Source of the DNA: Styela clava
Taxonomy: Eukaryota
DNA length: 64,000 nucleotides
Direction: 5' to 3'
Assembly (NCBI RefSeq): GCF_964204865.1
Contig: NC_135251.1
Span: 12,214,001-12,278,000 of the forward strand
Shown: positions 18,901 to 54,900 of the stretch, piece after piece
Layout: every line of letters begins with the position of its first letter
Numbering within the stretch: the stretch's first letter is position 1
Notes under the pieces: model-generated
Database searches by the model: none
Told to the model about the DNA's origin: nothing
The model's input: the letters and a program-made list of their open reading frames with translations, nothing else
Translations under genes and position numbers: made by a program

Positions 18901-21900
18901 GGCTAATGTCCCTTTTATATATTATGTGGTGGCTTTCTAATCAGAGGTGGAAATTACTGTACCTATTGATATTATTTATTTCTAGAACTCAAAAAACATT
19001 ATTACTGCAATTTCATCTACTTCAATTTACTCATCTATTCTATAGTTTAGTGACTCTCTATTAAGTTTAGAATTTTAAGTAAATTTATTCATCAAATGGT
19101 AGATTCTATTTTCAAGATGAAGTATGACTCAAAATTAAATCTTTCGATTTATTCTAGGCATGGTATCAAAACTTGACATGAGTACTGATATGATGACTGT
19201 ATTAAGTGAACAAAATTTTGAGGAAGTGAAAAAGGTTTGGGATCACGGGATCAAAGAAACTAAAATGAGTGACAAAGAAATCAACAAAGTACTATCGTGT
19301 GAGTATTACTAGAATTTACAAGTGTAACAATATAGGAATAAATTATTTGTGGTGAACTGTGAAATCATATCTTGTTCCATTATATAACAAGTGACAATTT
19401 GCTAATTATATTTGCAATGATAATAAGATAATATTTTCTTTCTATGATAAGGTATAGATTATTGATTTACATTTTTATGATTTACAGTACCGGGTATGGA
19501 TACAGCTAAAGTTGAAAAAATGAGTGAAGCTATTGCAATGCCAGAGGTTGTTGAAGTTCCTGTTATTTTCGATACAAAAATTGCTGTCCAAAGTAAGTAT
19601 ATTTGTTAGCGATCTTTTTTAAATATGCGAGTCATTGTCAATTACTGTGACCAAGTCAAATTTTAAGTTGCTTTTTCCATGAATTATGCCTTCATAATTA
19701 AATTATTTAAACACTATTAATTGATTAATTTTATACCTCGCCGTTTTTTTCACGTGAATTTCAGGATTTTTTTAGCACTGAGGCAGAAAAGTACTTTCCG
19801 AGAGATAAATTTTACAAATATATATGTATTTATTTTTACTTATCATATACTTATACTGTCATTAAGAAGCTGTTTTTATGGTGTAGATTGTAGAATCTAG
19901 AATCTAGATGATTACAGTGATACATGTATTACAGAGAAAGCAATAAAAGCTGCTATGGAAATTAAGATTGAAGAATTAGCAGCAAAGCGAGAACTTTCGA
20001 TGCAGGAAGCAAAAGACAAAAAGGACAAGTGCAACAAAATTAAAAGCAACAACGGACAATCTGAGGCATCCAAAACAAATTATGGTTATCTCAAAGGATT
20101 TGAAAAAATTTGTGATCTTATTGATGGTGAGATAAAAAATGAAGCATCCCATACTAATACTTGATTTAAGCAATTCCAGTGCTATTCAACATTCTTAATG
20201 GAAAAAGTATGTGAATACCAATTGAATGAAACATTTGTTTACTGGTTAATAATACCTTTGCAATTTAAAAATAACTTGAAACACAACAACTTTAACTTCG
20301 CTGTATAAGTTTATTGTGACTCCCAATGATTTAGTGAACATTTTCATTTTTTTTTCTGAATGCCGGTGAATATTTTAAGTTTTTTCAAATTTTGTTGTAC
20401 ATCTTAAATTTCAATGTGGAGAATTTCACTATGCTAGCTTTTATGCCCCTCTTCACCTTACTGAAATCCGTCATTGTGAATATTCTACTTTGCATTTTCG
20501 ACACAGAATCAAGCTATGAAATGTCAACAGAAACAACCAAACAAGTCGAACATGAAATAAAAAATACAGTTATGAAGCTTGAAAATAGTCGTAATAGAGG
20601 AGGTAATGCTATAAACTACATAAAAAATTAATTATGTCTAGACTCATTCATGACAAAATGAACGTGAAAATTGTAAAATAAGCAGAGAAATATGGTACTT
20701 ATTAAAAGTAGATGATGGTACTATGTTTTCGACATGCAATGAACATACAATCGTGGCAAATTTGTGAAAGTAAATATGCGCAAATCTGCTACGATTCTTT
20801 TTAATTTTTTTTCAATTTTTTCTTTCATGAAAATGTATCATAGCGTCATAACGTCATTCCAGTGTAGTTTTAATAGAATTGATGTACTATAGAAAATCAT
20901 TTGATTGTAATTACATTTTCAAAACAACAGTCAGTGTAATAATGGAATTATAGTCCAGTGTTTTTGTTTGATAATATTCAAGCGTAAAATATTTTATTTC
21001 TATTCTCACATATTTTTTTACAGATTTAGAAGCAGCTGAAAAAGCTAACAGCAGACTTCGAGCTGTGACAGAATTCATGCAAACTGCAGAGCAAGCTGTA
21101 AACATAGCATATGAATCTCTTGAAGATGGACCAGCAGGTTTAAATATAATTTGTTTTCATTTTTATAAATCAAAGATTTTATTAAGACTTGATTTTGAAT
21201 TTGTGGAGTGTAAACAAATTCTTATATATTCAAAAGTTCAGCTAAGCAGTGAAATTTCATATTTTTACTCGAATATTAGTTTCAACTTCAATCAGTGAGT
21301 ATTTTATTTCATATACATAGAACTAACTCTACCTCGAGTGGAAATTTCGCCCCGTTGGTCTTGATTGAAATCTCTGTCTCCGACTTCAGCGAAGGTTAGA
21401 CATTGCATTGCATTAAATCATTAAATTTCCTAAAATGTTGTATACTAATAGGAGAAAAAGAACTCACAGAGATGGAGAAAAAACAAATAAAAGAAAACAT
21501 TGTGGAGCAAATAAAAGCAGAGAAAGAAAAATATGGTATTGAAGATGAAGCAGCAAAAGGTAATTGTAATAGAATGAAAAAGTATGAAACCGAATATTCC
21601 CATGAGTTTGCTTGTCATTTCGTAATGCAAATGTAATGCTCATATTTTTATTGAAAATGGCCCCGGATTTAAATTGAATAAAAGCCAGTGTTAGCTGCAA
21701 AATCAGATTATCAAAAGACATTTTACTCTCGGGGTGACTCAGTATTATATATAATTTACATTTAACAAAAAGCACTGATCAGCATTTAGGTAGCGTAGCT
21801 ATGGGTTTCCGCTCATATTGCGAAAAACGAAAGAATTTTCCTAACCTTTGTTCTCTGTTTATACATTCTCTTATTTCAGAGCTTGCAAAGAATATAGATG

Positions 21901-24900
21901 CTTCTATAAAAACTGTATCCGTTGTTCTTCAACGTCGAACAATTGCTTCTAAACAGGAAAATCTTGAAGAATTGAAAACTGCATTCAAAGATAAACTTCA
22001 GAAAAATTCCAAGAATTCGGAGAGTAAGTATTATGCGAATGTGGTGCAAATTTTTTTTTGGATAAAGAGGTATAATAATATAATATTACATTATAACAAA
22101 ATTCGGGTGCTCCAGAAGTACGCGCACCAAGATGTCGCACAACCTGAATCTTTAACGGTACACACATACTATGTTCAGGTTGTGCGCCATCTTGGTGCGC
22201 ATACTTCTGGAGGTTCAAAATTCGATTACAATTTCCAAATTGCCATACCTTCTTATTTTTCTAACCTTAACCCTTTTATTCAATTACCAAAGAAAGATAT
22301 TTAAAACACTCAATTTTTATTGAAGAAAAATGTGGATTGAAGGAATTGAAATGTTCTCATGATTGTGATAAATTTCTACAAGTTTGCATCTGTTTTGGTG
22401 GGATGGTTTTATCTAATGATAAGTCAACATGCATAGTACCAGAAGGTGAGCTATTATGTATCTTGTGACATTTCACAAATTTGAAACTTCAAGATTTCTT
22501 GGATTGTGTAGCAAATTTAGTATATTTGCTTATCCACACACGAATTCAGTATTCTTACACCTGCCTTTCATGTCAAATCAATCAATTTTATTTTGGTCGC
22601 TTTGGAATGAAACAAGATAGCATAACAATAACATAAAGACAAACAAAATTAATTTCAGAACCATCTGGTACTGATCTCTCTTCTCTTCCCACCGATGTTG
22701 TACACGCTGTACTTCTTTATCAGCAAGAAAAAATTGAACTTCAAAATCTGAAAAAAAATATTCCGGAAAAAATATCTGATCAAGAAAAGGCAGTCGAAGG
22801 TATGTAACTTTGTGAGCTTACCTCTTGAATATATGATTGCGTAAATATTCATCATCAACTGAATTAATAGAAAAAATTACGTAAAAATATTGCTAAAAAT
22901 ACTGAAAAATTGTAAAAATCATTATTTTAGATGTTTTGAAATCTGCTGAAAAACAGGGCATAAAGCCTGATAATATTGTTCGTGCTATTGTTAGTAAAGA
23001 ACTTGATAGAGCGAGCAGTGGAATTACAGACGACAAAGATGTTGTGACAACGGCACAAACTTTGCAAGAAGCAGTGGCGGTTAAGAAAATAATGGATAAA
23101 TCGAAGACTTTTGATGAACTTTTGACAATGATAAAAAGTACCGATGGTAAAGTTAATAAATCGTTTGGATTATTACTCTGTAAATATTGCTAGGTATATC
23201 AATCTAATATTATTGTTTCATCTAAAATTCTGCAGACGATGAGGAAAAAGATGATTCAGTCAATGTCGCAAAATTGTTTACATACATTGCGGAGTCGAAA
23301 GTAGACAGAACATTGCAAAAAATGAAGGAACAAATCACAGAAAGTATGGAACAATTTTTTATTTTAATTTTTTGTTTTATTTAGGTCAACTTCGTGTTCA
23401 GTTTTTATATTATTAGGTTGCTGAGCGGAAATATTTGTAAACCACTTATTTTAGATCTTCTTAGAGTCAGGAAGACTATATGCTAATTGATCTTCATTGC
23501 TAATGTATTCTTTTATATCCCTCCTAATAGCATAGAGTTTTTTATTTATTGGGCACATTTAACACTGTTATTGAATTTACATCGAACAGTGATAAAACTA
23601 GTTTATTTAATTTACTTTTTCGCTGGTATTTAATTTCTGAGGTACTGTATCGTATGGTTCAGTGTTTCTTGCCATTTTCTGTACACTATATGTAGATCGC
23701 ATTTCCAAAATAAAATCAAGGTTTCGCTTCAATTGCATTTACCATATCAAACGTTTAATAAATCACTCGAATTTTTTTTTTTATACTTATCATCATTTTA
23801 GTGCCAATTGAGGATACTTCATCTAGTTTTAAAATTATGAGGAATGTCATCAAGATAAGCAAAATGGCTGAAGAATCAAAGCATTCTGTGACAAAATCAC
23901 TGGATGAAATTCCAGAATCTGACGAAGGTGATTTATTCGATTTTCACATTGCTTTAGAGCCAGCCTCGCATCCTTTTTTATTGTCAATATTATTAGTTGT
24001 TTAGTCATTTTGTTTGACAAACTGTGTTCTATGTTTCTTTGTCTGATGGTGTATACTATAAATATTACATGTTTTACCGAGTTATGTAGCGTATGTAGAA
24101 TTCCCTTTTTTACTGTTAGAATTAGCAACGCCTCGTTAGCAAGGCCTCGTCCTAGTGTTGAGTATATATGTTAGTTTTATATTTATTTCACACTGAAAGA
24201 ATTGTTTAATCCTGGATTTCCTGATGTGCTTTTATATCAAAACTTCGTAATTCTTTGTGGCTGTGTAAATGGAAGTTATTCAATTACACAATCATGCTAT
24301 GCTTCGTTCGTGTCAAATGGTCTAATGACAAAGCATAAACCGTGGGCTTTTATTAGATGATTCAAGCTTGAAAAGGGAAAATGATAACGAAAAAGAAAAT
24401 AATATTGAACTTGAGATTGCTCCCAAAACAACTGAAACACCAGCGCCTGTCTTTAAGTTGGAGGTTGCAACTCCAGTAAACAAGAAAGGTATGATGGTGT
24501 CATTTGATAAAAATCGCTTAATGTGAATAATGATTCGAAATAAATAGTTCGTTAAATTTCTTATCATCAACAAATAACTGAGACTGCAAAATAATGACAG
24601 CTATAGTGAACTTTAACGTACTCATAGTTCATCATATTTCATTGTATTGCTAATGCGGTGAAATCGGAATATGTGCGGCACCAGATTTTAAATATATTGG
24701 AAATAATGTTATTTAAGACAACACAAAACGTTATATCCAGAAAATTTGTCTAAATACAAAATTATTGTATTTTTTGAAGAATTGGAAATTAAGGAAGAAC
24801 TTTTGGAAATCAAAAAAACGCCAAAAGAAAATTCAGGTATGTAATACATTATTATGTAATTTTATTCATTATTGTTCTATATGTTCAATAATGTTAAAGA

Positions 24901-27900
24901 CAACACAGAATGTTGTATTCAGAAAACTTGTCTTAAATACAAAAACATTGTTTCTTTTGTAGTATTGGAAATTGAAGAGGAAGATGTGGAAATCATAGAA
25001 ACGCCGAGAGAAAATTCAGGTATAAAATACATCATTAGGTAACTTATTCAATACTGATCTATCAATTATATATGCTAATAATTACTGTGCCAGATTAACT
25101 TTTATTAAAGTTTATGAAATATTTTGAGGAAAGATATTACGAAGTGTTAATATTTACTGACTATATTATGATAAGATAACTCGGGATTGTGGAGCATGGA
25201 GAAGAAAAAAGAAACGGAAACGAAAGTAGAAAATATTCTAGAAGAAATCAGTCATGATCAAATTGACAAGACAGACGAAAAAAACATCGAACAGAAGGAC
25301 GAACAAAATGAAAAGAAAAATGTTGAAGAAGAAATAGTGACGGAACAAGAAAAAGATGTAGAAAAGAAGGACGACACTTCCAAAAAGGAAGACAAAGTTA
25401 TAGAGAGTATGTTTTTTATCGTGCTTGCCAGCATAACCTGGTTTTATGGCATTTTTACAATTATATAAGAATATATTTATAAGCCATTGTAGAAAGTGCT
25501 TTTATACTGTAAATTATTCGTTTTTAGATCTTTGGAATATAGAGAAAAGTGATCAAAAGGAAGATTCTGTAGCTGTAGATTATTTAGAAGAAGTTGTGGA
25601 AGGGGGTAACGCTAAAGACAAAGAGGAAGATGAAGATGAGAAAGATAAATACGATGGCAAAGAGCAAGATAATGGTGATGAAAAAGATGATAAAGATAAA
25701 TACGATGGCAAAGAGAAAGGTGATGATGATGAGAAAGATGATAAAGATAAAAACGATGGCAAAGAGAAAGATGATGGTGATGAGAAAAATGATAAAGATA
25801 AATACGATGGCATAGAGAAAGATGATGGTGATGAGAAAGATGATAAAGATAAATACGATGGCAAAGAGAAAGATGATGGTGGTGAGAAGGATGATAAAGA
25901 TAATTACGATGGCAAAGAGAAAGATTATGGTGATAACGATGAATTTGGAGACAAGAAGAAAGATGATGGTGATGATAAAGGTACATACGATTTTTAGGAG
26001 AAAGATGTTTATAACATTAAATAAAGTGAAAAAATTAAATACGGTGACTAAAAAAATTATTTGAATCATAGCACACTTCTAGTTTATTTAAGTGTCCACA
26101 AAATAATGCTAATGTTTGGTCCATAGCAAGTTTAAACCAATTCAACAAATGTCCTCCAACAGAACAATGCGTTGTAATCATACAATATTATCTGAGCTTG
26201 GCATTTAAATTTTGATATTTTTAAATTTTCATACTGAAAGACACCTACAGATTGATTATATTCATACATTTGACATGTTTATGCATGTGTAATAGGTTTT
26301 GTAAATTCAGTTAATTTGGATGTTTTGTTTTCACTGATTTATTTAATTTTGTTTGTATAGAAAATATATATATCTATATAAAAAAACATAGAAAATTTAT
26401 AAAACTAACTGATGATTGCTGTTAATTTCAACAGAAAATCAAATTAAGGTTGAGCAGACGAAGGCACTCTTGCATACAGAGCTAATTGAAAGTATCAGAG
26501 ATCAAGAAATTGCGGCAAAGAAAAGAAAGACAAACAGCCATAAATGTTCAAATGTTCTTGGCAAAGAAAAAGAGCAAAACGACTTAGGAATTTGTGATAT
26601 AAAATCAAGTACGTTGAATAACATCATTCATTTATTACGGTATAAAATAAATAATTAACTTTATTTACCAGAAATATTTTATGTGATTTTTATATCGCTA
26701 TTGCTAGAGCAAATAAATCGATTATCACTTTCAAATCCAGCCTCTCCCTGTAATATGTCGAAAATTAACGAAAAGGTAGGTATGTTCGTTTTAAATACCT
26801 ACTTGCTTTCAAATTGCTGTTCAATTTAACCTAATAACGTATGTTCATGAATGATGCAAGACATTATCTTGTGTTTCTATCTTGTTAAATTCTGAAATTT
26901 CACATATATATATGTTTTTTGATAACGATTGTGGGCGCTTCAGAAGTATGTGCACCAAGGTGGCGCACATTCTGATAACCCTAACCTGGTACACATACTA
27001 TATTCAGGTTATGCGCCATATTGGTGCACATACTTCGAGAGTACCCAATTATGTAATATTACCATTTATATTCAAAGAAAAAGAATACGAAATCATAATA
27101 GAGACTGATAAACAAATTGAAGCTACTTTAAAAAATGCTCTCGACATGATGACATCAGACGACAAACCAGAAGGTAAGTTAATAAAATATGAAAATGTAA
27201 CGTGAACCATTCACTTACTTATTTCTAAGATAAATTATCTGGTTACAGATTTGGAAAAGATTCGAGAGTTACAAAAAAAACTATTCACAATTTCAAAGTA
27301 TTTTGGGGTAGCTGATGATATTATGGAGACAGTGACATCTTTAGATAATGCAGAAGGTGAATAGTTAATTGAATTTTACTTTGTTTTTTTTCTAATCAAT
27401 TATGTTATGAACTTATACCAAATATTCCAAGAAATATCTAGATTAAAAAATCATAGCATTCTAATTTAAAATGTAGCACTTTAGATAAACTACAACCATT
27501 TTAACTTATCATAATTTTAATATGTAGTCTTTAATTATTGGGCCTTAGAATACCGAATACATATTTATCTATTATGAAATGGGTATATTACTACTATGTT
27601 TCATCACTTGAAGATTAATTTTGTACACCTTACAACGATTCAACAGATGTGGTGTATACAGTCGCAGAAAAAAGTAAACTGAAAAAAGATTTGCTTGAAG
27701 AAATGCAGTACACTGATTCAAATATACCGATGGACAAAGAAGTGGAACAGTGTAAGTACAGTTTGCACGCGAATGCATGAGGCAGAAAATGTGTTTACTA
27801 TATCAATTTTTATCATTTTGGCAATATTAACAGTTATAGTATAGTTTTCCAAATTTTTAGCTTTTTTCAAATTAAAGTTTTAATTAACATCCCACAGCTT

Positions 27901-30900
27901 TGTTTAACTAATTGAAGATGAAGTTTTTCACGCCAACGCTGATGCTTATAATTGGAGTTCGATTACCATACAAAGAAATGCACTGATTGGCATGTTGGTT
28001 CTATTCTATTCACACACTAAATGCTTATCCGCATTTGTTTAGGATAGTTTGACTTTATTGTTTAGATCTGTTGATGAATAGACGGATAACTTGGTATACT
28101 TGGTCAATTGTAATACGTCGTCGAATCATATACATAATTCGTTACAAACTAAATCGATTTCGAATATTGATAAAAATGAGAATTTTGATGTATGCAAGAA
28201 GATTTGAAAGTAAGTGAACTTTACCACATAAATTGTTGTAAAAACTATTGCATATACTGCAGATACTATTGTCCACAATAACCGGGAAAAGACTGAATTC
28301 CTGAAAAACAGATTTGTTTTCAAAGATAGCGCAAAATGAATATGCGTAATATTAAAATTCATTCTGTTAGAGCTGCTGATCAATGGACCATGGTATTTAC
28401 ATTCATGTCTTCAACATTCTTTGGATATCTTAATCTAATGCCATTTCCAGTATTTTTATTATACCTTCTTTATAGTTTCTTTAATGACTTTCGTCAATTT
28501 TTTTGGTCAAAGTTATTCACACATACTTTTATTTCGTCGATTCAGAAAAATGTGGATTGCCCGCATTGGGTTGCAGTCATGATTGCGATCTTTCGTCAGA
28601 GAAATGCATATGCTCTGCTGGTATGACTTTAGGTGGAATAGGAGGCAAAACTTGTGTATGGAATGAAGGTAATAATCAGTTATTCGATGTAGAATAATGC
28701 ATAATTCTTTGGACACAAAGATTTCCAAATATTAATTAGTATAGCCTACTTATGCAGGTATATAATCTTTTTCAACTAAACCTTCATTTTCCTTAACCTG
28801 GTACAATTTGTACGATTGAACAGAACATATTTTTTTATTATGTACTCGGCAGATTCATTTTTGAAAAATTTTAGTCCTCAAAATATCAATTTTTCTAGTT
28901 GAGGCGTCAATGGTAGTGTTAACATATTTGCATTATTTCTATTATCACAAAGATTTTGATAATAAACTTGGCTTTATTCTAGATTTCATTGAAAATGGTG
29001 ATCTTCCGCTGACTCCAGAATTTGCATACATAGTTCGGTTATTGATTTTCTACAGACAAGAGTTGATGCTAGTTAGCACAATGGAAGAAATTGTTCCATT
29101 GGAAAAAACTGAAAGTGAGAAGGAGGCCGATGGTATGTATATATACTGCATTCAAATTACATGTTATGTAGTTAGCCGTGATAAAATGATATCATATCAT
29201 ATCAAGTGGGTCATTTTCTGTTTTATGTTTTCAAATTGTGTTTAAGTATTTGTTCAAAAATTTTTTTTTTGAAAATGATGAACACAAACCAACAAATTTT
29301 AGATTTAATAAGACAATGAATTAAAATGTTATGCTCAGAAACGCCTTGTTTTGGTTGAAACAAAGAATACTTTGTTCTACCTTAACCTTAAGCCTTATTG
29401 TGTTTAGATGCATTGAAGCAATTTGAAAACAAAGACAAAAATCTCGAACATGTTCTTCTGATGATTCTTGAGAATTACAGAAAGGATCAATTCATTGGAA
29501 AAGATTTAGACTCTCCGGATGCAATGCAAGATAAAATTACAGTTGCACAGGCTATATCATACCAAGAAATAATTTCGCTTGAGAAATTAATACAAAACAC
29601 TCAAGAAATAGACAAGATATTAGACGAGGTTGAAGGTAAAAGTGAAGGTATGACAATATACAGATTTTTATGATTGTCTATTATCTATATGAATCGACTA
29701 ATATGCACTATGCACTGAATTTATCAGTATGAGTGAATTCAATGCTATTGGTCAATAGTGAATGATACAAACGAATTTTTTTTTTAAATGTATTTATATT
29801 TTTCATATATATCATAATTGTCATGCTTCACATTATTAATCTTTGAAATACATGATTAAAATAAATGTTTATTATAATAGCTGACACACAAAAAGTTTCA
29901 ATCAATGAAAAGCTTTTGGAAGTCACAGCCAAATCAAGACTGATGATGGCCATGCAGAAAATCAAATCACAACTCGGGAAACGTGATGGTGAGAGATAAA
30001 AATATTTCTTTTAATAATTTTGAAATTAATTTTTTAAATATGAACCTTCGATAAATATATAGTATTAATGCACATGATTTTCAATTTGGCCCTTAATTCA
30101 AAAAGGATGCAATCATGAATAGAAACAATGTAAATACAGATGTTTTCTAAAGTGTACAGGGTGGTAGCTAAGAAAATAGAAAATTTGTCAAACAGCTATT
30201 CATTTTTACAAATGATGATTTGAAAACGAGCAAGTTAATCTTCAAAATGCCGCACGAGCTTAGACTTCTAGGTTAAGACACTGCTCGGAAGTCTACGGAC
30301 AACGTTTTGAGAATCTATGAGTATAATATAACATATGACTTTAAAATCGTGGAGAAGATTGTTCTTTGTAAGAAGTAAATACTGTTTGACAAATTTTCTG
30401 TTTTCTGGCGACCACCATGTATATATAGGAATGTAAACACATGTGCAATATATTCGAAGCAATAGGAAGTTTTGGGTTAGTTTACGACTAATTGGATTTA
30501 TTATTTGAATAGATGTACAAGAAGAAGATGATTCAAATTATCAAGTTTTGAATGCAATTGTTGAGGTTAATAGGAAACTGAAAGAACTAAAAGAAACAAC
30601 TGATTATGAAAGATCCAAATCGAAGGATGACGAAGATAGCCCCAAGACGGAGGGTGGCAAAGATAGCCCCAAGACGAAGGATGGCGAAGATAGCCCCAAG
30701 ACGGAGGATGGCGAAGATAGCCCCAAGACGAAGAATGGCGCAGATAGCCCCAAGACGGAGGGTGGCAAAGATAGCCCCAAGACAAAGGATGGCGAAGATA
30801 GCCCCAAGACGAAGGGTGGCAAAGATAGCCCCAAGACGAAGGATGGCGAAGATAGCCCCAAGACGAAGGATGGTGAAGATAGCCCTAAGAAGGAGGATGG

Positions 30901-33900
30901 CGAAGATAGTCCCAAGACGAAGGATGGCGAAGATAGCCCTAAGACGAAGGATGGCGAAGATAGCCCCAAGACGAAGGATGGCGAAGATAGCCCCAAGAAG
31001 AAGGATGGCGAAGATAGCCCTAAGACAAAGGATGGCGAAGATAGCCCCAAGACGAAGGATGGCAAAGATAGCCCCAAGACGAAGGATGGCAAAGATAGCC
31101 CCAAGACGAAGGGTGGCGAAGATAGCCCTAAGACGAAGGATGGCGAAGATAGCCCCAAGACGAAGGATGGCGAAGATAGCCCCAAGAAGAAGGATGGCGA
31201 AGATAGCCCCAAGACGAAGGATGGCGAAGATAGCCCCAGGACGAAGGATGGCGAAGATAGCCCCAAGACGAAGGATGGCGAAGATAGCCCTAAGACGAAG
31301 GATGGCGAAGATAGCCCCAAGACGAAGGATGGCGAAGATAGCCCCAAGACGAAGGATGGCGAAGATAGCCCCAAGACGAAGGATGGCGAAGATAGCCCCA
31401 AGACGAAGGATGGCGAAGATAGTCCCAAGACGAAGGATGGCGAAGATAGCCCCAGGACGAAGGATGGCGAAGATAGCCCCAAGACGAAGGATGGCGAAGA
31501 TAGCCCTAAGACGAAGGATGGCGAAGATAGCCCCAATACGAAGGATGGCGAAGATAGCCCCAAGACGAAGGATGGCGAAGATAGCCCCAAGACGAAGGAT
31601 GGCGAAGATAGCCCTAAGACGAAGGATGGCGAAGATAGCCCCAAGACGAAGGATGGCGAAGATAGCCCCAAGACGAAGGATGGCGAAGATAGCCCCAAGA
31701 CGAAGGATGGCGAAGATAGCCCTAAGACGAAGGATGGCGAAGATAGCCCCAAGACGAAGGATGGCGAAGATAGCCCCAAGACGAAGGATGGCGAAGATAG
31801 CCCTAAGACGAAGGATGGCGAAGATAGCCCCAAGACGAAGGATGGCGAAGATAGCCCCAAGACGAAGGATGGCGAAGATAGCCCTAAGACGAAGGATGGC
31901 GAAGATAGCCCTAAGACGAAGGATGGCGAAGATAGCCCCAAGACGAAGGGTGGCAAAGATAGCCCCAAGACGAAGGATGGCGAAGATAGCCCCAAGACGA
32001 AGGGTGGCGAAGATAGCCCCAAGACGAAGGATGGCGAAGATAGCCCCAAGACGAAGGATGTCGAAGATAGCCCCAAGACGAAGGATGGCGAAGATAGCCC
32101 CAAGACGAAGGATGGCGAAGATAGCCCCAAGACGGAGGATGGCGAAGATAGCCCCAAGACGAAGGATGGCGAAGATAGCCCCAAGACGAAGGATGGCGAA
32201 GATAGCCCCAAGACGAGGGATGGCGAAGATAGTCCTAAGACGAAGGATGGCGAAGATAGTCCTAAGACGAAAGATGGCGAAGATAGCCCCAAGACGACGG
32301 ATGGCGAAGATAGCCCCAAGACGAAGGATGGCGAAGATAGCCCCAAGACGAAGGATGGCGAAGATAGCCCCAAGACGAAGGATGGCGAAGATAGCCCCAA
32401 GACAAAGGATGGCGAAGATAGCCCCAAGACAAAGGATGGCGAAGATAGCCCCAAGACGACGGATGGCGAAGATAGCCCCAAGACGACGGATGGCGAAGAT
32501 AGCCCCAAGACGAAGGATGGCGAAGATAGCCCCAAGACGAAGGATGGCGAAGATAGCCCCAAGACGAAGGATGGCGAAGATAGCCCCAAGACGAAGGGTG
32601 GCGAAGATAGCCCCAAGACGAAGGATGGCGAAGATAGCCCCAAGACGAAGGATGGCGAAGATAGTCCCAAGACGAAGGGTGGCAAAGATAGCCCCAAGAC
32701 AAAGGATGGCGAAGATAGCCCCAAGACGATGGATGGCGAAGATAGCCCCAAGACGAAGGATGGCGAAGATAGCCCCAAGACGAAGGATGGCGAAGATAGC
32801 CCCAAGACGAAAGATGGCGAAGATAGCCCCAAGACGAAGGATGGCGAAGATAGCCCCAAGACGAAGGATGGCGAAGATAGCCCCAAGACGAAGGATGGCG
32901 AAGATAGTCCCAAGACGAAGGGTGGCAAAGATAGCCCCAAGACGAAGGATGGCGAAGATAGCCCCAAGACGAAGGGTGGCAAAGATAGCCCTAAGACGAA
33001 GGATGGCGAAGATAGCCCCAAGACGAAGGATGGCGAAGATAGCCCCAAAACGAAGGATGGCGAAGATAGTCCCAAGACGAAGGGTGGCAAAGATAGCCCC
33101 AAGACGAAGGGTGGCAAAAATAGCCCCAAGACGAAGGATGGCGAAGATAGCCCCAAGACGAAGGATGGCGAAGATAGCCCCAAGACGAAGGATGGCGAAG
33201 ATAGTCCCAAGACGAAGGGTGGCGAAGATAGCCCCAAGACGAAGGATGGCGAAGATAGTCCCAAGACGAAGGGTGGCAAAGATAGCCCCAAGACGAAGGA
33301 TGGCGAAGATAGCCCCAAGACGAAGGATGGCGAAGATAGCCTCAAGACGAAGGATGGCGAAGATAGCCCCAAGACGAAGGATGGCGAAGATAGTCCCAAG
33401 ACGAAGGGTGGCAAAGATAGCCCCAAGACGAAGGATGGCGAAGATAGCCCCAAGACGAAGGATGGCGAAGATAGCCCCAAGACGAAGGATGGCGAAGATA
33501 GCCCCAAGACGAAGGATGGCGAAGATAGCCCCAAGACGAAGGATGGCGAAGATAGCCCCAAGACGAAGGATGGCGAAGATAGCCCCAAGACGAAGGATGG
33601 CGAAGATAGCCCCAAGACGAAGGATGGCGAAGATAGTCCCAAGACGAAGGGTGGCAAAGATAGCCCCAAGACGAAGGATGGCGAAGATAGCCCCAAGACG
33701 AAGGGTGGCAAAGATAGCCCCATGACGAAGGATGGCGAAGATAGCCCCAAGACAAAAGATGGCGAAGATAGCCCCAAGACGAAGGATGGAGAAGATAGCC
33801 CCAAGACGAAGGATGGCGAAGATAGTCCCAAGACGAAGGGTGGCAAAGATAGCCCCAAGACAAAGGATGGCGAAGATAGCCCCAAGACGACGGATGGCGA

Positions 33901-36900
33901 AGATAGCCCCAAGACGAAGGATGGCGAAGATAGCCCCAAGACGAAGGATGGCGAAGATAGCCCCAAGACGAAGGATGGCGAAGATAGCCCTAAGACGAAG
34001 GATGGCGAAGATAGCCCCAAGACGAAGGATGGCGAAGATAGCCCCAAGACGAAGGATGGCGAAGATAGCCCCAAGACGAAGGATGGCGAAGATAGCCCCA
34101 AGACGAAGGATGGCGAAGATAGCCCCAAGACGAAGGATGGCAAAGATAGCCCCAAGACGAAGGATGGCGAAGATAGCCCCAAGACGAAGGATGGCGAAGA
34201 TAGCCCCAAGACGAAGGATGGCGAAGATAGCCCCAAGACGAAGGATGGCGAAGATAGCCCCAAGACGAAGGATGGCGAAGATAGCCCCAAGACGAAGGAT
34301 GGCGAAGATAGCCCCAAGACGAAGGATGGCGAAGATAGCCCCAAGACGAAGGGTGGCAAAGATAGCCCCAAGACGAAGGATGGCGAAGATAGCCCCAAGA
34401 CGAAGGATGGCGAAGATAGCCCCAAGACGAAGGGTGGCAAAGATAGCCCCAAGACGAAGGATGGCGAAGATAGCCCCAAGACGAAGGATGGCGAAGATAG
34501 CCCCAAGACGAAGGATGGCGAAGATAGCCCCAAGACGAAGGATGGCGAAGATAGCCCCAAGACAAAGGATGGCGAAGATAGTCCCAAGACGAAGGATGGC
34601 GAAGATAGCCCCAAGACGAAGGATGGCGAAGATAGTCCCAAGACGAAGGATGGCGAAGATAGCCCCAAGACGAAGGATGGCGAAGATAGCCCCAAGACGA
34701 AGGATGGCGAAGATAGTCCCAAGACGAAGGGTGACAAAGATAGCCCCAAGACGAAGGATGGCGAAGATAGCCCCAAGACGAGGGATGGCGAAGATAGCCC
34801 CAAGACGAAGGATGGCGAAGATAGCCTCAAAACGAAGGGTGGCAAAGATAGCCCCAAGACGAAGGATGGCGAAGATAGCCCCAAGACGGAGGGTGGCAAA
34901 GATAGCCCCAACACGAAGGATGGCGAAGAAAGCCCCAAGACGAAGGATGGCGAAGATAGCCCCAAGACAAAGTATGACAAAGATAGCCCCAAGACGAAGG
35001 ATGGCGAAGATAGCCCCAAGACGAAGAATGGCGAAGATAGCCCCAAGACGGAGGGTGACAAAGATAGCCCTAAGACGAAGGGTGGCAAAGATAGTCCCAA
35101 GACGAAGGATGGCGAAGATAGTCCCAAGACAAAGAATGGCGAAGATAGCCCCAAGACGAAGGATGGCGAAGATAGCCCCAAGACGAAGAGTGGCAAAGAT
35201 AGCCCCAAAACGGAGGATGGCGAAGATAGCCCCAAGACGAAGGATGGCGAAGATAGCCCCAAGACGAAGAGTGGCAAAGATAGCCCCAAGACGGAGGATG
35301 GCGAAGATAGCCCCAAGACGAAGGATGGAAAAGATAGCCCCAAGACGAAGGATGGCGAAGATAGTCCCAAGACGAAGGGTGGCAAAGATAGCCCCAAGAC
35401 GATGGGTGGCAAAGATATCCCCAAACCAAAGGATGGCGAAGATAGCCCCAAGACGAAGGATGGCGAAGATAGCCCCAAGACGAAGGATGGCGAAAATAGT
35501 CCCAAATCAAGAAGAGTTGAATATAATGAAGATGAAAAACATCTCAAAGAAAATGAACGTGGTGACGGAAGTGGAGATAGCCGATGTAAGCCCAATTCAT
35601 CTTAAAATATGTTTATTTGGTATACAATCCATTCTATGTATTTGTTTTTAAATGATATCTTCTTAGCAATTGAGAGATCACAAAACACGATCCTTCCAAT
35701 TAAAACACTGTTTTTTTGGCGGGGATGATTGTTATCGTTTGCATTAAAGTAACGTAATACTAATATCTAATAGATAATTACTGAGATTAAAATTAATATT
35801 AAATGTTCAGTTTGCTCCATACATGTATTTGTTTAGTTATAATTAGTTCTGATATATTTGAGAAATTTTATTTTGAATGTTTAGATGAGAACGCAAAGTA
35901 TGAAAAATCACCCGATCAACTTTTATATGAGATTGAAAAATCATTAGAAGATGATAAAGGTAAATTATATGCTATCAGTAGAATTAATTTTCCTTTTGCA
36001 ATTTGTACCTTTAACATATAAGAAACTGCCTTCTTACTAACATATCTTACTTGTTTTGATGATAGAGTGTGAAATAGTTCCTAATACATACATACTTTGT
36101 ACGAACTTTGTTAAGGTAATAAATAACACATATTCGGGGTAATATTTATTACTTTTGTCGATAATAGATTCTACTTTCTCTAAGAGTAACTCGGTGCATT
36201 TAAAAATAACAACAAGGTTTTTTCACGCATAGAAAATGATTTGAAACTTGAGCAGTTAAAGGAGTTGCTGCTAGAAGAAATGAAGGATCAATTCAAAAAG
36301 CAAAATGTCGCGTTAGCTGAGAGAGCAGAGCATGCAATGAGATGTGGACACACAAAACAGGATAATCATGAAAATGCAAATGTGGTTCATCCAGAAGGAT
36401 CTTGTAAAATCAAAGGTATTTTAGTGTGATCGATCATGTGTGATATTAGGGAAACTGTTCTATTTTTTGTGAATACATTTAAAAAGTGTAGGATCGACTG
36501 ACTATGGAAAAAAGCAAAACTTGTGACTTCTTTATTTATAATCACTTTCTAACGGGCACTGCTCTTGTTTTAAGTATAAATCTAGAATAGAAACAGCCTG
36601 CTTATATATTTTAGAAATCAGTTTAGTGTAAATAGAAATTAAAAGATTTAAATGGATTTGTATATGATTGTAAAGTCTAAATAAATTTCCATATCAAAAG
36701 CCAAAATTTTTTAATTACCCAACAGAAAAAGACTTTGCTATACTAGAAGAAGCAGACAAACAAGTTGAAACAGTGATGAAAGAAGCATATAAAGCATTGG
36801 AGTTCGGCAATAACAAGAAAGAAGGTTTGAGATTTATTCACAAATATCACAATATAAGAAAAAAATATTATAAGTATTTATATTTCCTGTATACTAGACC

Positions 36901-39900
36901 TCAAGAAGATGTTACTTTTGAAAAAGAAGTTAGAATCAGTGTCTGAGATTTTCAATGCTGCTGATGACATTGAGACAATGGCATTTGGGTCAAACAAAAC
37001 TATCTCTGGTAAATAATTTTTTCTGTTCAGTATTTTTTCATTGTTTCTTGAGTTTTTTTTTTCAGGTTGTCAAACACTGATTTATGAATATTTGAGCATT
37101 TTTCATTATTTATGATTGCATATTACTCGAGGTAATGTCATATAAATTCATAACAATGCGATTGTTACTATTGTTTTGTTAATATTCCGTTATTGGACAT
37201 ATAGCATTCTCTAATTTCCGACAATTTAATATGCTGTGTATTTCATTAGCAGATGTAATGGACCAAATAAAAACTAGTATACTAGAAGAGATACCTGACC
37301 ATCACTTGGAGGCTTCAAATATAGATGTATTGAGAGGTAAGTGAGATATGAAAAAAGTATAGACTACATATCGAATGAAATGGCTGCTTATACTTACATG
37401 AAGTAAAATACATATATTCGTACATCATCCATAAAATACCTGCCTACCTTTCGATCTTTTCCATAAAACATTTATTTGGCATTTTTGTTATGAATCGAAT
37501 ATTTACTATGGATCTATTATAGCTCTATTGTTGAGGACAAAAATAACTTGGTATACATGGACAATTGTTATACGTCGACGATTCATTTATATCTTTCGGT
37601 ATAAACTTCAAGAATTTAGAATGATAATAAAAATGAAGATTTTGATTTATGCAAACACATTTAAAGGTAAGTTTACTTACGTACATAAAATATTTTATTT
37701 GAAAGCATCACTGATAGTAAATTTGTTTAAAGGAAATTGTAAAATATCCGAATTTGGATGCAGTCATGACTGCGATATTTTGTCAAAAAAATGCATCTGT
37801 CCGCATGGAATGAAACTTGACTCGGAGACAAAAACGTGCCAATGGAACGAAGGTATTTTATTTTATCTATATATTAATTTGTTTTAATTGCTGTTAACCG
37901 TTTCTTCATTACTATAATATACATCTATAAAAATGGTGCAGCAAATCATTCTCTATTAGCATGCGTGTGTATTTTGATTTTTTTTCAGACTTTATAGCTG
38001 AAGGGGAACTTACAGATCTTCATCAAGATATTGTTCGTTTGATACTATTATACAGACAAGAGTATATGTTAATGAAGACTGTAGCCGAAATGATTCCTGA
38101 AGATAAATCTCCAGAAGAAGAAACTGCAGAAGGTGCAAATTGTTAAAATGTTGAAATTTAAAACAATTTGCAATTTCGCAATTTTATTCATTGTTATACA
38201 TCAATATGAATGGCTTTTTAAAAAAGCTTTTCAAAATAGATAAATTTTCTGATGGTCATGAAATAAGTTTTTTGTATTACGGTAGACATGATGCAATTGG
38301 TTGTTTTTATTATAACCTGTATTACTTTATTGGATAAGCTTGAATATGAATATATTAGTTTTCTACTTCATTTAAGAATTATTTGATGCATTGGTTTTGT
38401 TTATAGTAACCTTCCATGGCTTATTCTAATTTTTTTTTTACTTCACTCTAGATAATGTTACGCGCAGTCCAATGGAGTTTCTTTCAATCGTCCATAAAAA
38501 CAAATTATGACAATATAAAATACCAAAACAACATTAGTAGGACTACACCAAATACTAATAACTATTTCTGTACTTTTTCCCCGAATTATCCCAGGAGTTT
38601 TAAAAGATGCTGAAAATGAATGGAATGGTAAAGAAGATATACTTGAAGTCATTGTTAAAAATAAGCAAAATGAATTGAAAAAAGAACTGAAGGAAGTTAA
38701 ATCTCCGTCTGACGAGGAACTTTTCAAGAAAAGCAAAGCCTTACAAGAAACAATTAATCTTCTCAAACGAATTAAAAAATCTGATGAGTTGAATAAAATA
38801 ATCAAAATGGCTAAAGATACAGGTGAGCGTAAAATGATAATTATTCAGACAGAATCGTCTGAATTATTAGCTGGTGACCTTCTAATTAAATGTCAGTGTT
38901 AATCTTTGCACTGCATTTTGACATATCTTTATCATTTGATTAACTAAGGAAAACGGATTGTATATTTGAAAAAAATAATGAGCATGTCAATGAAAAATAT
39001 TTCTAATTATCAATGCAGCAGCTTCACTGTTTGTCAATCGATCGAAAGAAAAATTAATATATTTTAATTAAATAGGCAAAGATAATGACAGTTCCATGTC
39101 TGCAGAGATACTGACTTTGACAGCAAAGGCAAGAATGGATACTGTGATGCAAAGACTTGAAAAAGAGTTGACAGGTAAGCAATTATTTATTGAAAACAAC
39201 CTGAAATTTTACTTATTTTAATATACCGATATCTGTTTATTTCAGACTCAAATTTAGAGGAATCACCGGAATCTCAATACAATATTTTGTACTCATTAAC
39301 AAAAGCGACCAAGGAATTTAAAGAATTGAATGAAATTCCAAGCAAAGATATGAATGTTGGAGATGGTATGTGTGTATATGTTCCATACATAAATCAGCAA
39401 ACAACAAACAACTATTTTTTTTTTAATTCCAATTTTTAGATGAAAAAGTGAAAGAAGATATATCAAATATTTCAGCAAATATTGAGTATGAAAAAAGCAA
39501 AGAGCTTTTGGATGAAATTGACAAAATTTCTTTCGGAGATGTTGAAGGTTTGCTCAATGGCATCTTCCTAAAAATTAATGCAGTCCTTCAAAACAATCAT
39601 GTTCGATTCAACCAATCGACATTCTTCAAACACCCATTTTTTAATGAAGCTGCTTTAATAATTTCAGACAAAGAGCAAATTTTAGGAAAAATAAAAGAAA
39701 AATTAGAACGTGACATCGAAGAAAAGATGCAGAAACATGAGCTTGAGGTTGCAGAAAAAAAAGAAAAAAGAGAAAAATGTAAAAAGGAGAATCCGGCCGG
39801 AAAAGAAAATGAAAAATCACCTCACGAAAACTGTGGGGAAGAAAGTGGTAAAAATAATAGTTCAAAGGATAAACTTGTTTTTACTGAAAAACCCAATTTG

Positions 39901-51900: not shown

Positions 51901-54900
51901 GGAACGTGACATCGAGGAAAAGATGGAAGAACAAGAGGCTGCAGTTGCAGAAAAGAAGGAAAAGCTTGAAAAATGTAAAAAAGAAAACCCTGCTGGAAAA
52001 GGAAATGGAAAATCTCCTCACGAAAGATGTGGAGATGAAAGTGGTAAACACATACAATGGATTATGTCGTTGGAATACAATTTTTTTCTTGCAAAAAATG
52101 TTTACTTCTTTTAGCATTAGAATACTCTTAATTACTATTATTTTCATCTATTAATGATATAAGTAAGTTTTATGACTATATGGGCTGATCTGATTTATAT
52201 AGAGAAGTCAGTAACTTTTGAAAAATATCTTTGAAGTCTGCATTTTATTGCCCATCTCACTGCGCTCATGACAATTTTTGTGATGCTATGTATAATTTTG
52301 TTTTTCATTCATCTAAATTCAGATACAAACAAGCAGGTGGAAGAAGCAATGAAAAATGTTTATGAGAAGTTGAAAAAAGCAAAGACTGAAGGAGGTTTGA
52401 ATTTTATATAATTTAATTACAATAAAAACGGAAAAATTCTTAATGGCATAATATTTCAATTTAGATTTAAAGACTGCTGCTCTTAAACATGCAGAACTAA
52501 CAGCTGTGGCTAAGTTTGTAGGAAAAGTTGATAAAATTTTGGAATCTGCACAAGACACAGAAAAAGGTCAGTCTCTGTTTAATATGTTAAAAATTTCGTA
52601 GTTTTTAATACTTTTCATTAAACAATTATACAAAATTATATATTGTTTCTTTAGACAAAATTATAATGAGCCCATCCGACAAAGAAGAAATGAGAAACAA
52701 ACTAGTTGAAGAAATGAAAAATAGCGGCATCGTACCAGTTGTTGAAAACAAAGCTGCAATGGGTAAGTTGGTCAGTGATTAAGTTTTCAAATTATAGGTT
52801 TTTTCATACTAAAAGTTACATTTTCGACTGAAATAGATGCTGTGAAGCATATTGAGGTGCCGACCGAAACGTTGAAGAACATTTTACAACGCAAAGTCGT
52901 TAAAGATATTACACAAAGACTTGTTGAACTTGACGAAATTATCGGAAAGAAAGTTTTAAAACATGCGAAATCAAGTGAGAGTAAGTACAAGTTTAATGGA
53001 ATATATTTATACAAAATAGTGAGAATCAGAAAAATAACATTTGTTTCTGCTCCAACAGAAAAATGCTCAATATCGGAATTAAAGTGCAGTCACGATTGCA
53101 ACAAACTGACCAAGAAATGTATTTGCTACGAGGGAATGACTCTTGTTAACGGAAAACAATGTGTATTGAAGAAAAGTAATATATAATTGTCCTTTTTAAA
53201 ATCTTATTACTTTGCTTTAACTTTTGTTAGTGGTTGATTCAATATTACTATTCCTATTTATTGATACATGCATAATTCTAGATATCCACTATGTATTTAT
53301 TTTTTAATAGGATTTTTAAATTCGGTGAAATTTAATACCTTTTTTTTTCTCAGACATTACAGATGGAACGGATGTCTCTAAATTCCCTCAAGAGATATCT
53401 CTTTCTTTAATGCTACGGAAGGAAAATAAAGAATATCTTTCAGTAATAAAAAATGATACTCAATCACTTAAATCTGATGATGAAAAGAATGTGGAAGGTA
53501 AGGTATTGTCATATCAGATATCTAATTAAGGTAATATTAATTATATTAACTTTTATTAACTCTTTCAGAAACATTAGCAAGTTTTGAAAAGAAGGGATTA
53601 CCCTTGGATGATCTAATTACTGCCCTCGCACATAAAAAGAAACTTGAAGTGACGAAAGTTTATGAAGCTGATTCTGACAATGGTGAAACCGAAGATCAAA
53701 CATACAACGAAGAATACGAGGTATTGAAAAGAGCAAAGGAATATCAAGAAGCTGATTCTTTACAGAAATTATCAATGAAACGTAAATCATTTGAAAAACT
53801 TCTTGATGCAATGAAAGAAACGGATGAAGGTAATATTAAAATGCCAATTTTGGATATCTGTCTTGGATTAGTAAATAGATATACATGGTACAATTTATCA
53901 AACTTTTTTTGTTTCTTGCAGATGAAACAACACTTGATGATAATGAAGATAAAAACACTCTGTTGGTGCTAAAATATATTGCGGAAACAAAAGTTGATAA
54001 GAAAGTTGAAGAATTGACTCAAGCACTGAAAAATAGTGAGTAATTTTTTATCTTTTCTTTAAGAAATTTCATTTTTGAAAACAATTGTGACAATAATATT
54101 TTTTTCATTAGATTCTGACGTCTCGTCGAGTCTAGAACTTCTGGATTATCTGGGAAAAATTAAAAAGTTGAAAAAAGATTCTGAAGAAGAAATTGATTTG
54201 ATAATTAAATTAGAGGAAAAAGTGAAAGATGATAAGGGTGAGGGTAGAATTTTATTCGTTATGTGCGGCATTTTGTTAATATAGTTGACTCTACACATAT
54301 AAGCAACAAATGGCTATTTGATGAACTATAATTAGAGTAAGGTATTTTTGTTTTCTTATTGTCCATTGAATATTAATCACGTGCAACTCATTTTTATGTT
54401 GAGTCATCTTTATTTGTAAGATTGTAATGCTAATTTCAACTCGAAAGTATATTCTGTAAATATTGTTTATTGCCACAATTACTCAATTCTGTTATTTGTT
54501 TTCCAGAAGATCATCCCATTGAAGAAGTTAATAATCTGGATGAAAAATCTGAAACCAAAAATCTTGAAAAATATTCTAAAGACATAATTGCTGAAATTGC
54601 GGAAGTGGAAGGTCAAAATCCAAAAGGTGAAATAATATTCGAGAACAATAACTTCAATTTTATATTTGATTTTGTTTGATAATATTTTTATTTTCTGTTT
54701 AAAACATGAAAAATACAATATGACTAATCGTTTTGTGATAAAAAAAACGTATTAGGACTGAGTAATTTTATAATGACTTCTGCCTCACAATAATCTGCGG
54801 AAGTTCTACAATCCTTTTTGCTCGATTGTATTCTTGTATTATGATATTTGTTGTTACATTGTGAAAACATATTTCAGCACGTCAGATTACTTCAACCAGT

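What the first reader, a model, noticed from the sequence alone, without database searches (positions are those of the whole stretch)
28066..28209. Cryptic cationic, Trp/Tyr/Ile-rich 48-aa exon hidden in an acidic protein (copy 1)
Seen: this 144-nt phase 1-1 exon, absent from the ORF track, reads YLLMNRRITWYTWSIVIRRRIIYIIRYKLNRFRILIKMRILMYARRFE (11 R, 2 K, 1 E, net about +12, roughly half hydrophobic/aromatic). It fills the pre-EGF slot, which is a 144-nt exon in most modules and normally an ordinary polar helix (e.g. AVKHIEVPTETLKNILQRKVVKDITQRLVELDEIIGKKVLKHAK), and it keeps that slot's central RR. Known: cationic amphipathic Arg/Trp-rich peptides are typical membrane-active antimicrobials; some ascidian AMPs (styelin D) and marine adhesives use modified Trp/Tyr/Arg. 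Inference: the exon has been repurposed as a releasable AMP-like peptide (dibasic RR near both ends), a membrane or polyanion anchor, or a coacervation sticker pairing with the acidic tracts.
Basis: partly seen in the sequence, partly recalled or inferred. Interest (0 to 1): 0.82.

Follow-up and report, generated by a model that had tools for sequence, protein, structure and literature searches.

The report
Conserved arginine-rich helix exon, Styela matrix gene
The 144-base stretch is a real, selectively maintained coding exon of a giant secreted sea-squirt (Styela clava) protein, an unusually greasy and arginine-rich version of the helix that precedes each EGF domain, and nothing found here supports the idea that it is a released antimicrobial peptide.

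Summary
Positions 28066-28209 form a 144-nt phase 1-1 exon with AG and GTAAGT splice sites. It is open only in the stated frame and has net charge +12 and 57% hydrophobic or aromatic residues.

The window is Styela clava. The sister exon 37523-37666 is spliced exactly as proposed in two RefSeq models of LOC120335993.

The two copies are the only ones in the genome. They differ mostly at third codon positions (dN/dS about 0.3). They are the best conserved exon between two adjacent sister modules: 66% amino-acid identity, against 56% for the EGF exon and about 30% for most others.

The exon is an in-register paralogue of the ordinary pre-EGF helix exon. It keeps that exon's hydrophobic and basic positions. 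Its polar and acidic positions have become Ile, Tyr, Trp, Phe or Arg. Skipping copy 1 would create a TAA at the junction.

The releasable-AMP reading is not supported. The terminal dibasic pairs are absent from copy 2, the helix is not facially amphipathic, and no related peptide exists in 1.84 billion proteins.

My best reading is a non-released association helix, possibly paired with acidic segments. That function is inferred, not shown. RNA evidence could not be obtained. No annotated protein containing copy 1 was found.

The scan's notes already list copy 2 on this same window.

The parts
28066..28209 (+). Slot-4 (pre-EGF) exon of module A, copy 1: 144 nt, phase 1-1, net charge +12, predicted long alpha-helix
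   Evidence: Sequence and frames. In-register alignment to the other slot-4 exons. AF2 helix over residues 9-46, pLDDT about 88.
37523..37666 (+). Slot-4 exon of module B, copy 2: 144 nt, phase 1-1, net charge +10
   Evidence: 74% nucleotide and 66% amino-acid identity to copy 1. Used with exactly these borders in RefSeq models P0001 (residues 239-285) and P0002.
28210..28240 (+). First 31 nt of the downstream intron, still homologous to 37667-37697
   Evidence: Positions +7 to +31 are 64% identical against a background of 29 +/- 9% (P about 1.5e-4). Homology ends after +31.
27647..27751 (+). Exon 3 of module A. It ends with one extra base, t, so joining it directly to the EGF exon would give TAA
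28546..28668 (+). EGF-like exon (slot 5) of module A
   Evidence: Six-Cys pattern. 56% identity to the module B EGF exon 37733-37852.
28983..29132 (+). Exon 6 of module A: acidic and hydrophobic helix exon (net -8), a candidate partner of exon 4
   Evidence: 45% identity to the module B exon 37989-38132 (net -9). Third best conserved exon.
30509..35602 (+). Open reading frame (stop to stop) containing the giant repeat exon, an expanded exon 9 of module A that separates the two copies
   Evidence: Its first residues align to exon 9 of module B. 1698-codon open frame.

Best explanation
Positions 28066-28209 are a translated structural exon of a giant secreted modular protein of Styela clava. That protein has a VWD head, repeated helical modules each with one EGF-like domain, and a 5-kb acidic repeat. 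The locus includes LOC120335993.

The exon is the module's fourth exon, which in every module encodes a helix of about 38 residues just before the EGF domain. In two adjacent sister modules this helix kept the family's hydrophobic and basic positions. Its polar and acidic positions changed to Ile, Tyr, Trp, Phe, Met and Arg. The result is a helix that is hydrophobic on most faces and studded with arginines.

Shown:
- exon structure and reading frame
- paralogy in register with the ordinary slot-4 exons
- purifying selection on the protein sequence
- use of copy 2 in RefSeq gene models

Inferred:
- The helix stays in the protein rather than being cut out.
- It works as an association surface, packing against or salt-bridging to acidic partners.
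- Candidate partners are the neighbouring acidic-hydrophobic exon 6 (net -8/-9) and the acidic tracts of the same or neighbouring molecules.

The confidence given covers the whole statement. On its own, the claim that this is a real, translated, selected exon and not a released peptide rates about 0.85. The association mechanism on its own rates about 0.4.
For: Exon reality:
- AG/GTAAGT sites, and a single open frame in both copies.
- Copy 2 is spliced at exactly these borders in XP_039259537.1 and XP_077975306.1. The latter maps at 100% identity to the window.
- There is no other phase-compatible exon between exon 3 and the EGF exon.
- Skipping copy 1 gives TAA at the junction.

Selection:
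- The 35 differences within codons fall 10/7/18 by codon position (37 nucleotide differences in all).
- NG86 dN 0.22, dS 0.73, ratio 0.30; Fisher P = 0.0036.
- It is the best conserved exon between the sister modules.

Paralogy in frame:
- Ungapped alignment with T11, R18 and the hydrophobic positions shared.
- Against three ordinary modules there are 36 hydrophobic-to-hydrophobic and 17 basic-to-basic matches. A further 32 polar or acidic positions became hydrophobic and 19 became basic.

Helix: AF2 with the eight slot-4 exons as the alignment gives one helix, residues 9-46, pLDDT 88.

Partner hint:
- Exon 6 of the same two modules carries net -8/-9, is 37-41% hydrophobic, and is the third best conserved exon.
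- Arg is specifically enriched. There are 11 and 6 Arg in the two 47-residue exons, against 46 Arg codons in the other roughly 2630 residues of P0002.
Against: - No RNA evidence could be obtained for copy 1.
- No annotated protein containing copy 1 was found. The profile search of 1.84 billion representatives returned only the copy 2 model, and two word searches added nothing.
- Synonymous divergence in this exon (pS 0.47) is lower than in every neighbouring exon (0.66-0.81), and homology runs 31 nt into the intron. Part of the exon's high conservation may therefore come from a short gene conversion or from splicing-level constraint, not from protein function.
- The proposed pairing with exon 6 got no verdict from complex prediction.
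- A single-sequence fold of the 377-aa model was uninformative, with pLDDT 44.
- No orthologue was seen, so conservation is shown only between paralogues within one species.
Confidence: 0.55

Rival explanations
1. Releasable antimicrobial-like peptide. The exon is cut out of the giant protein at the dibasic sites near its ends and acts on membranes.
For: Net charge +10 to +12, 57% hydrophobic or aromatic residues, predicted helix. From general knowledge, Styela clava does make cationic peptides (styelins, clavanins).
Against: - The terminal RR pairs of copy 1 are not conserved in copy 2.
- There is no R-x-K/R-R site.
- The conserved central RRR is shared with ordinary modules.
- The whole-helix hydrophobic moment is low, and basic residues lie all round the wheel.
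- It is an internal exon of a very large matrix-type protein, homologous in register to a structural helix.
- There are no sequence relatives among short peptides.
Confidence: 0.04
2. Conservation is largely historical. A short non-allelic gene conversion of about 180 nt copied one exon 4 onto the other after the modules had diverged. The odd composition is tolerated rather than specifically useful.
For: pS is 0.47 in exon 4 against 0.66-0.81 in all neighbours. Homology extends 31 nt into the downstream intron and then stops abruptly. The blastn match spans 28063-28240.
Against: Even since any such conversion, changes are concentrated at third positions. dN/dS is 0.30 and both frames stay open (P about 3e-4 under random change). 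Conversion does not explain how the composition arose or why it persisted. The 37 nucleotide differences show the event, if any, is old.
Confidence: 0.2
3. Regulated cassette exon. The low synonymous divergence and the conserved intron flank reflect splicing control. For copy 1, skipping would act as a switch that truncates the protein before the acidic repeat.
For: The exon is symmetric (144 nt, phase 1-1). The downstream intron flank is conserved and synonymous change is reduced. Skipping copy 1 gives an immediate TAA, while skipping copy 2 keeps the frame.
Against: There are no transcript data. Every exon of this gene is phase 1-1, so symmetry is not special. Both RefSeq models include copy 2.
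Confidence: 0.12
4. Copy 1 is an unused or decaying pseudo-exon, or module A is not part of a translated product.
For: No annotated protein with copy 1 was found. The RefSeq model P0002 starts downstream, inside the giant repeat exon.
Against: - The frame is open, the splice sites are strong, and the substitution pattern is coding-like.
- Exons 3 to 6 of module A join without a stop.
- It is the only phase-compatible exon in the slot.
- The searches could not see proteins longer than about 4700 aa, and the representative library may hide the upstream model.
Confidence: 0.08

Closest known systems
The ordinary slot-4 (pre-EGF) helix exons of the same gene, for example 21880-22023, 52837-52980 and 61547-61690
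   Same: - Same exon length and phase, and the same position before the EGF exon.
- Ungapped alignment with shared Thr11, Arg18 and hydrophobic positions.
- A similar number of basic residues (10-13).
- Predicted as one long helix.
   Different: - 1 acidic residue instead of 6-8.
- 27 hydrophobic or aromatic residues instead of 12-17.
- Arg replaces Lys.
- Trp appears: none in the five other slot-4 exons translated.
- Much more strongly conserved between its two copies than the other exons of the same modules.
Cationic alpha-helical antimicrobial peptides of Styela clava haemocytes (styelins, clavanins). This comparison is from general knowledge and was not retrieved here
   Same: Same species. 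Cationic, aromatic-rich, helical.
   Different: - Those are made from small dedicated precursors with a signal peptide and a pro-piece. This is an internal exon of a multi-thousand-residue matrix protein.
- No sequence similarity was detected.
- No conserved flanking cleavage sites.
- No clean amphipathic face.
Basic 'sticker' segments that pair with polyanionic segments in secreted adhesive or coacervating proteins, and basic polyanion-binding helices of matrix proteins. These are functional analogies from general knowledge
   Same: An Arg- and aromatic-rich patch sits in a protein otherwise dominated by acidic and polyampholyte tracts. Arg is preferred over Lys. An acidic partner exon lies nearby.
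   Different: No homology and no experimental or structural evidence here. The complex prediction gave no verdict. The segment is also far more hydrophobic than typical polyanion-binding motifs.

Membership tests
Slot-4 pre-EGF helix exon of this gene's modules | 144-nt (or 147-nt) phase 1-1 exon lying between exon 3 and the EGF exon | tested here: met
Slot-4 pre-EGF helix exon of this gene's modules | In-register sequence similarity: Thr11, central (Q/R/K)R(R/K), shared hydrophobic positions | tested here: met
   Alignment A2: R18 invariant in 8 exons, 23-26% identity to two ordinary modules without gaps. 36 hydrophobic and 17 basic class matches.
Slot-4 pre-EGF helix exon of this gene's modules | Long alpha-helix | tested here: met
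   AF2 helix over residues 9-46, mean pLDDT 87.8, using the paralogue alignment. In the single-sequence 377-aa model the helix was at low confidence only.
Cationic amphipathic alpha-helical antimicrobial peptide | Encoded in a small dedicated secreted precursor | tested here: not met
   It is an internal exon of a giant modular gene. The RefSeq model with copy 2 has 2681 aa and is itself partial.
Cationic amphipathic alpha-helical antimicrobial peptide | Conserved processing sites flanking the mature peptide | tested here: not met
   The RR pairs near both ends of copy 1 are TK and NT in copy 2.
Cationic amphipathic alpha-helical antimicrobial peptide | Facial amphipathicity along the helix | tested here: not met
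   Whole-segment hydrophobic moment 0.12 and 0.24. The best 18-residue window is no higher than in ordinary modules. Basic residues lie in all six wheel sectors.
Cationic amphipathic alpha-helical antimicrobial peptide | Membrane or antimicrobial activity | not testable with these tools
   Needs a synthetic peptide and assays.
Alternatively spliced cassette exon | Transcripts both with and without the exon | not testable with these tools
Alternatively spliced cassette exon | Raised conservation of synonymous sites and of the flanking intron | tested here: inconclusive
   pS 0.47 against 0.66-0.81 in neighbours. 31 nt of intron are conserved on the 3' side only. Both are equally explained by gene conversion.

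The most novel reading that the evidence does not exclude
The two Arg- and aromatic-rich hydrophobic helices act as cationic 'stickers'. Together with the acidic exon 6 helices and the roughly 180-unit polyampholyte repeat between them, they would drive intramolecular clamping or intermolecular cross-linking (gelation or coacervation) of a secreted ascidian matrix protein. Copy 1 may be under splicing control, which would decide whether the acidic repeat is made at all.
Probability: 0.12. Interest if true: 0.6.

Novelty: new variant of a known kind. Interest (0 to 1): 0.3.

Why it matters
If the helix really is an association element, it would mark the functional core of two modules in an uncharacterised giant extracellular protein of a widely invasive ascidian. 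It would also give a concrete, testable handle on how such acidic, repeat-rich matrix proteins assemble: peptide against acidic repeat, or peptide against exon 6.

As it stands, the value is mainly in annotation. The exon is real and should be in the gene model. The public models split and truncate what looks like one phase-1 gene. The attractive 'hidden antimicrobial peptide' reading should not be carried forward without peptide-level evidence.

Tried and rejected
- **Annotated model containing copy 1.** The profile search of 1.84 billion representatives found only the copy 2 model. Word searches with P0002 residues 239-334 (candidates 1475-4692 aa) and P0001 residues 239-285 (207-660 aa) found nothing new. 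The third word search was left unused as unlikely to add anything.
- **Spliced model of module A.** I sent no joined model to any search or fold tool. Exons were searched by reference one at a time. Joining was done only locally, to count stops.
- **Family and look-alike scans.** Pfam gave no family for either exon, and only sub-threshold EGF-type matches in P0001. Rfam found nothing in the window. The ESM Atlas gave no usable hit.
- **Folding.** Folding P0001 alone gave mean pLDDT 44, which is uninformative.
- **Complex prediction.** Complex prediction of exon 4 against exon 6 gave no verdict (score 0.01). It is evidence neither for nor against binding.
- **Transposon origin.** The weak own-genome hits L003 and L004 (E 0.15-0.22) are an interspersed palindromic repeat whose translation happens to contain T-W-Y-T. 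There is no DNA similarity to the exon. Rejected.
- **Frameshifted or inverted copy of a polar exon.** The alignment to ordinary slot-4 exons is in the same frame and ungapped, and the other five frames have stops. Rejected.
- **Literature.** There were no hits for the locus or accession numbers. The Styela clava thyroglobulin-like protein (PMC12992692) is described there as a Tg1-domain protein. I saw no Tg1 domain in this locus and did not follow it further.

Full report
**What is there**

The exon is preceded by a T-rich tract and AG, and followed by GTAAGT. The other five frames all contain stops.

The 47 full codons hold 13 Lys/Arg, 1 acidic residue and 27 Ile/Val/Leu/Phe/Met/Trp/Tyr. The stop-to-stop frame is only 54 codons, which is why an ORF list with a 60-codon floor does not show it.

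**Organism and annotation**

A profile of the two copies was searched against 1.84 billion representative proteins. It returned a single hit, P0001. That is XP_039259537.1, an uncharacterised protein of LOC120335993 in Styela clava. Its cluster also holds P0002 = XP_077975306.1, 2681 aa.

P0002 maps to the window at 100% identity over 2668 of its 2681 residues. The window is therefore Styela clava.

P0002 begins at an internal Met inside the 5-kb repeat exon, so it does not cover copy 1.

**Gene context**

Every mapped exon is phase 1-1. Each module has about eleven exons, with an EGF-like exon in slot 5.

Copy 1 lies in slot 4 of a module I call A (about 26.4-30.6 kb). Copy 2 lies in slot 4 of the next module, B (about 35.9-39.4 kb).

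The start of the 5-kb repeat exon aligns to exon 9 of module B. The giant repeat is therefore an expansion inside module A. 'Two copies bracketing the repeat' simply means that two adjacent sister modules both carry this exon.

The whole genome holds only these two copies. The two weak extra hits are an unrelated interspersed palindromic repeat.

**It is the ordinary slot-4 exon, changed in composition**

The slot is a 144-nt phase 1-1 exon in other modules (147 nt in one). Aligned without gaps, five of these exons share Thr11, the central (Q/R)R(R/K) and the hydrophobic positions. Arg18 is invariant in all eight slot-4 exons.

| Copy 1 compared with three ordinary modules | Count |
|---|---|
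| hydrophobic positions kept hydrophobic | 36 |
| basic positions kept basic | 17 |
| polar or acidic positions now hydrophobic | 32 |
| polar or acidic positions now basic | 19 |

The number of basic residues is not unusual for the slot, which has 10-13 in most modules. What changed is the loss of acidic residues (6-8 down to 1) and the doubling of hydrophobic and aromatic residues.

Arg is specifically favoured. The two exons hold 11 and 6 Arg, against 46 Arg codons in the remaining roughly 2630 residues of P0002.

With the eight slot-4 exons as the alignment, AlphaFold2 gives one helix over residues 9-46 at pLDDT about 88.

**Selection**

The copies are 74% identical in DNA and 66% in protein.

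- The 35 differences within codons fall 10, 7 and 18 on codon positions 1, 2 and 3.
- NG86 gives dN 0.22, dS 0.73 and a ratio of 0.30.
- Synonymous against non-synonymous change differs with Fisher P = 0.0036.
- Random substitution at the same divergence keeps the frame open in about 10% of trials. It keeps the frame open with 16 or fewer amino-acid changes in 0.03%.

| Exon, module A vs B | Amino-acid identity |
|---|---|
| slot 4 (this exon) | 66% |
| EGF exon (slot 5) | 56% |
| exon 6 | 45% |
| most others | about 30% |

One caution applies. Synonymous divergence in this exon (pS 0.47) is lower than in every neighbouring exon (0.66-0.81, saturated). Homology also continues for 31 nt into the downstream intron, at 64% against a background of 29 +/- 9%, and then stops.

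A short gene conversion, or constraint on splicing signals, has therefore added to the conservation. The third-position excess shows that protein-level purifying selection has acted as well.

**Is copy 1 used?**

Direct RNA evidence could not be obtained.

Indirect evidence favours use:
- The splice sites are strong.
- It is the only phase-compatible open exon between exon 3 and the EGF exon.
- Exons 3 to 6 join without a stop.
- Joining exon 3 directly to the EGF exon creates TAA at the junction, whereas skipping copy 2 would keep the frame.

Against this, no annotated protein containing copy 1 was found. The word searches could only see proteins of 207-660 and 1475-4692 aa. The representative library may also hide the upstream model.

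I sent no joined model of module A to any tool. Exons were searched by reference, and joining was done only locally to count stops.

**The antimicrobial-peptide reading**

- The RR pairs near the ends of copy 1, proposed as cleavage sites, are T-K and N-T in copy 2.
- The only conserved basic cluster is the central RRR, which the ordinary polar modules also have.
- The helix is not facially amphipathic. The whole-segment moment is 0.12 and 0.24. The best 18-residue window (0.53-0.56) is within the range of the ordinary modules. Basic residues occupy every 60-degree sector of the wheel.
- No related short peptide exists in the libraries searched, and Pfam has nothing.

I rate release as an antimicrobial peptide at about 4%.

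**Most likely working**

This is inference. A helix that is hydrophobic on most faces and carries Arg all round is better suited to being packed against partners than to lying on a membrane surface.

In the same two modules, exon 6, just after the EGF domain, is acidic (net -8 and -9), more hydrophobic than average for this protein (37-41% against 27% for the whole of P0002), and the third best conserved exon. The rest of the protein is strongly acidic (P0002 has net charge -83).

I therefore read exon 4 as a non-released association helix. It would pair by hydrophobic contact and Arg-carboxylate (and perhaps Arg-aromatic) contacts with exon 6 or with acidic tracts, in the same or another molecule.

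The one test I could run, complex prediction of exon 4 against exon 6, gave no verdict and counts neither way.

**Verdict**

- The exon is real and under selection.
- The AMP interpretation is not supported.
- The sticker or anchor interpretation remains possible but untested.
- It is a lineage-specific compositional variant of a known exon type in an uncharacterised protein.

Interest is modest.

Noticed in passing
window 28210-28240 and 37667-37697: The first 31 nt of the intron after each copy are still homologous (64% beyond the donor hexamer, against 29% background). Synonymous divergence inside the exon is lower than in all neighbouring exons. This points to a short gene-conversion tract or a conserved splicing element.
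   Followed up: partly
window 28983-29132 and 37989-38132: Exon 6 of the same two modules is an acidic yet hydrophobic helix exon (net -8 and -9). It is the third best conserved exon between the modules and a possible charge-complementary partner of exon 4.
   Followed up: partly
window 28090-28101 and 37547-37558: An invariant W-Y-T-W (W-x-x-W) lies in both copies. From general knowledge this matches the consensus for tryptophan C-mannosylation in secreted proteins. It was not tested.
   Followed up: no
window 35402 and 52452-52598: The RefSeq model XP_077975306.1 starts at an internal Met inside the 5-kb repeat exon. It ends by reading into an intron of the fifth tandem cassette. The public annotation appears to split and truncate one very large phase-1 gene.
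   Followed up: partly
window about 26930-27075 and 22080-22215; L003:1336-1555; L004:1532-1767: A palindromic interspersed repeat (MITE-like) sits in two introns of this gene and on other contigs. It explains the weak own-genome protein hits to the exon.
   Followed up: partly
P0001 compared with P0002 (window 35402-38134): The two RefSeq versions differ at about six residues plus one repeat unit over 377 aa. One difference is a conservative Ile/Met change inside copy 2, at a position where copy 1 has Met. This is consistent with allelic variation between the sequenced individuals.
   Followed up: no
window 37667-37732: The intron between copy 2 and its EGF exon is only 66 nt, against 336 nt at the same place in module A. 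The whole stretch 37435-37884 is one 150-codon open frame, so retaining this intron would not break the frame.
   Followed up: no
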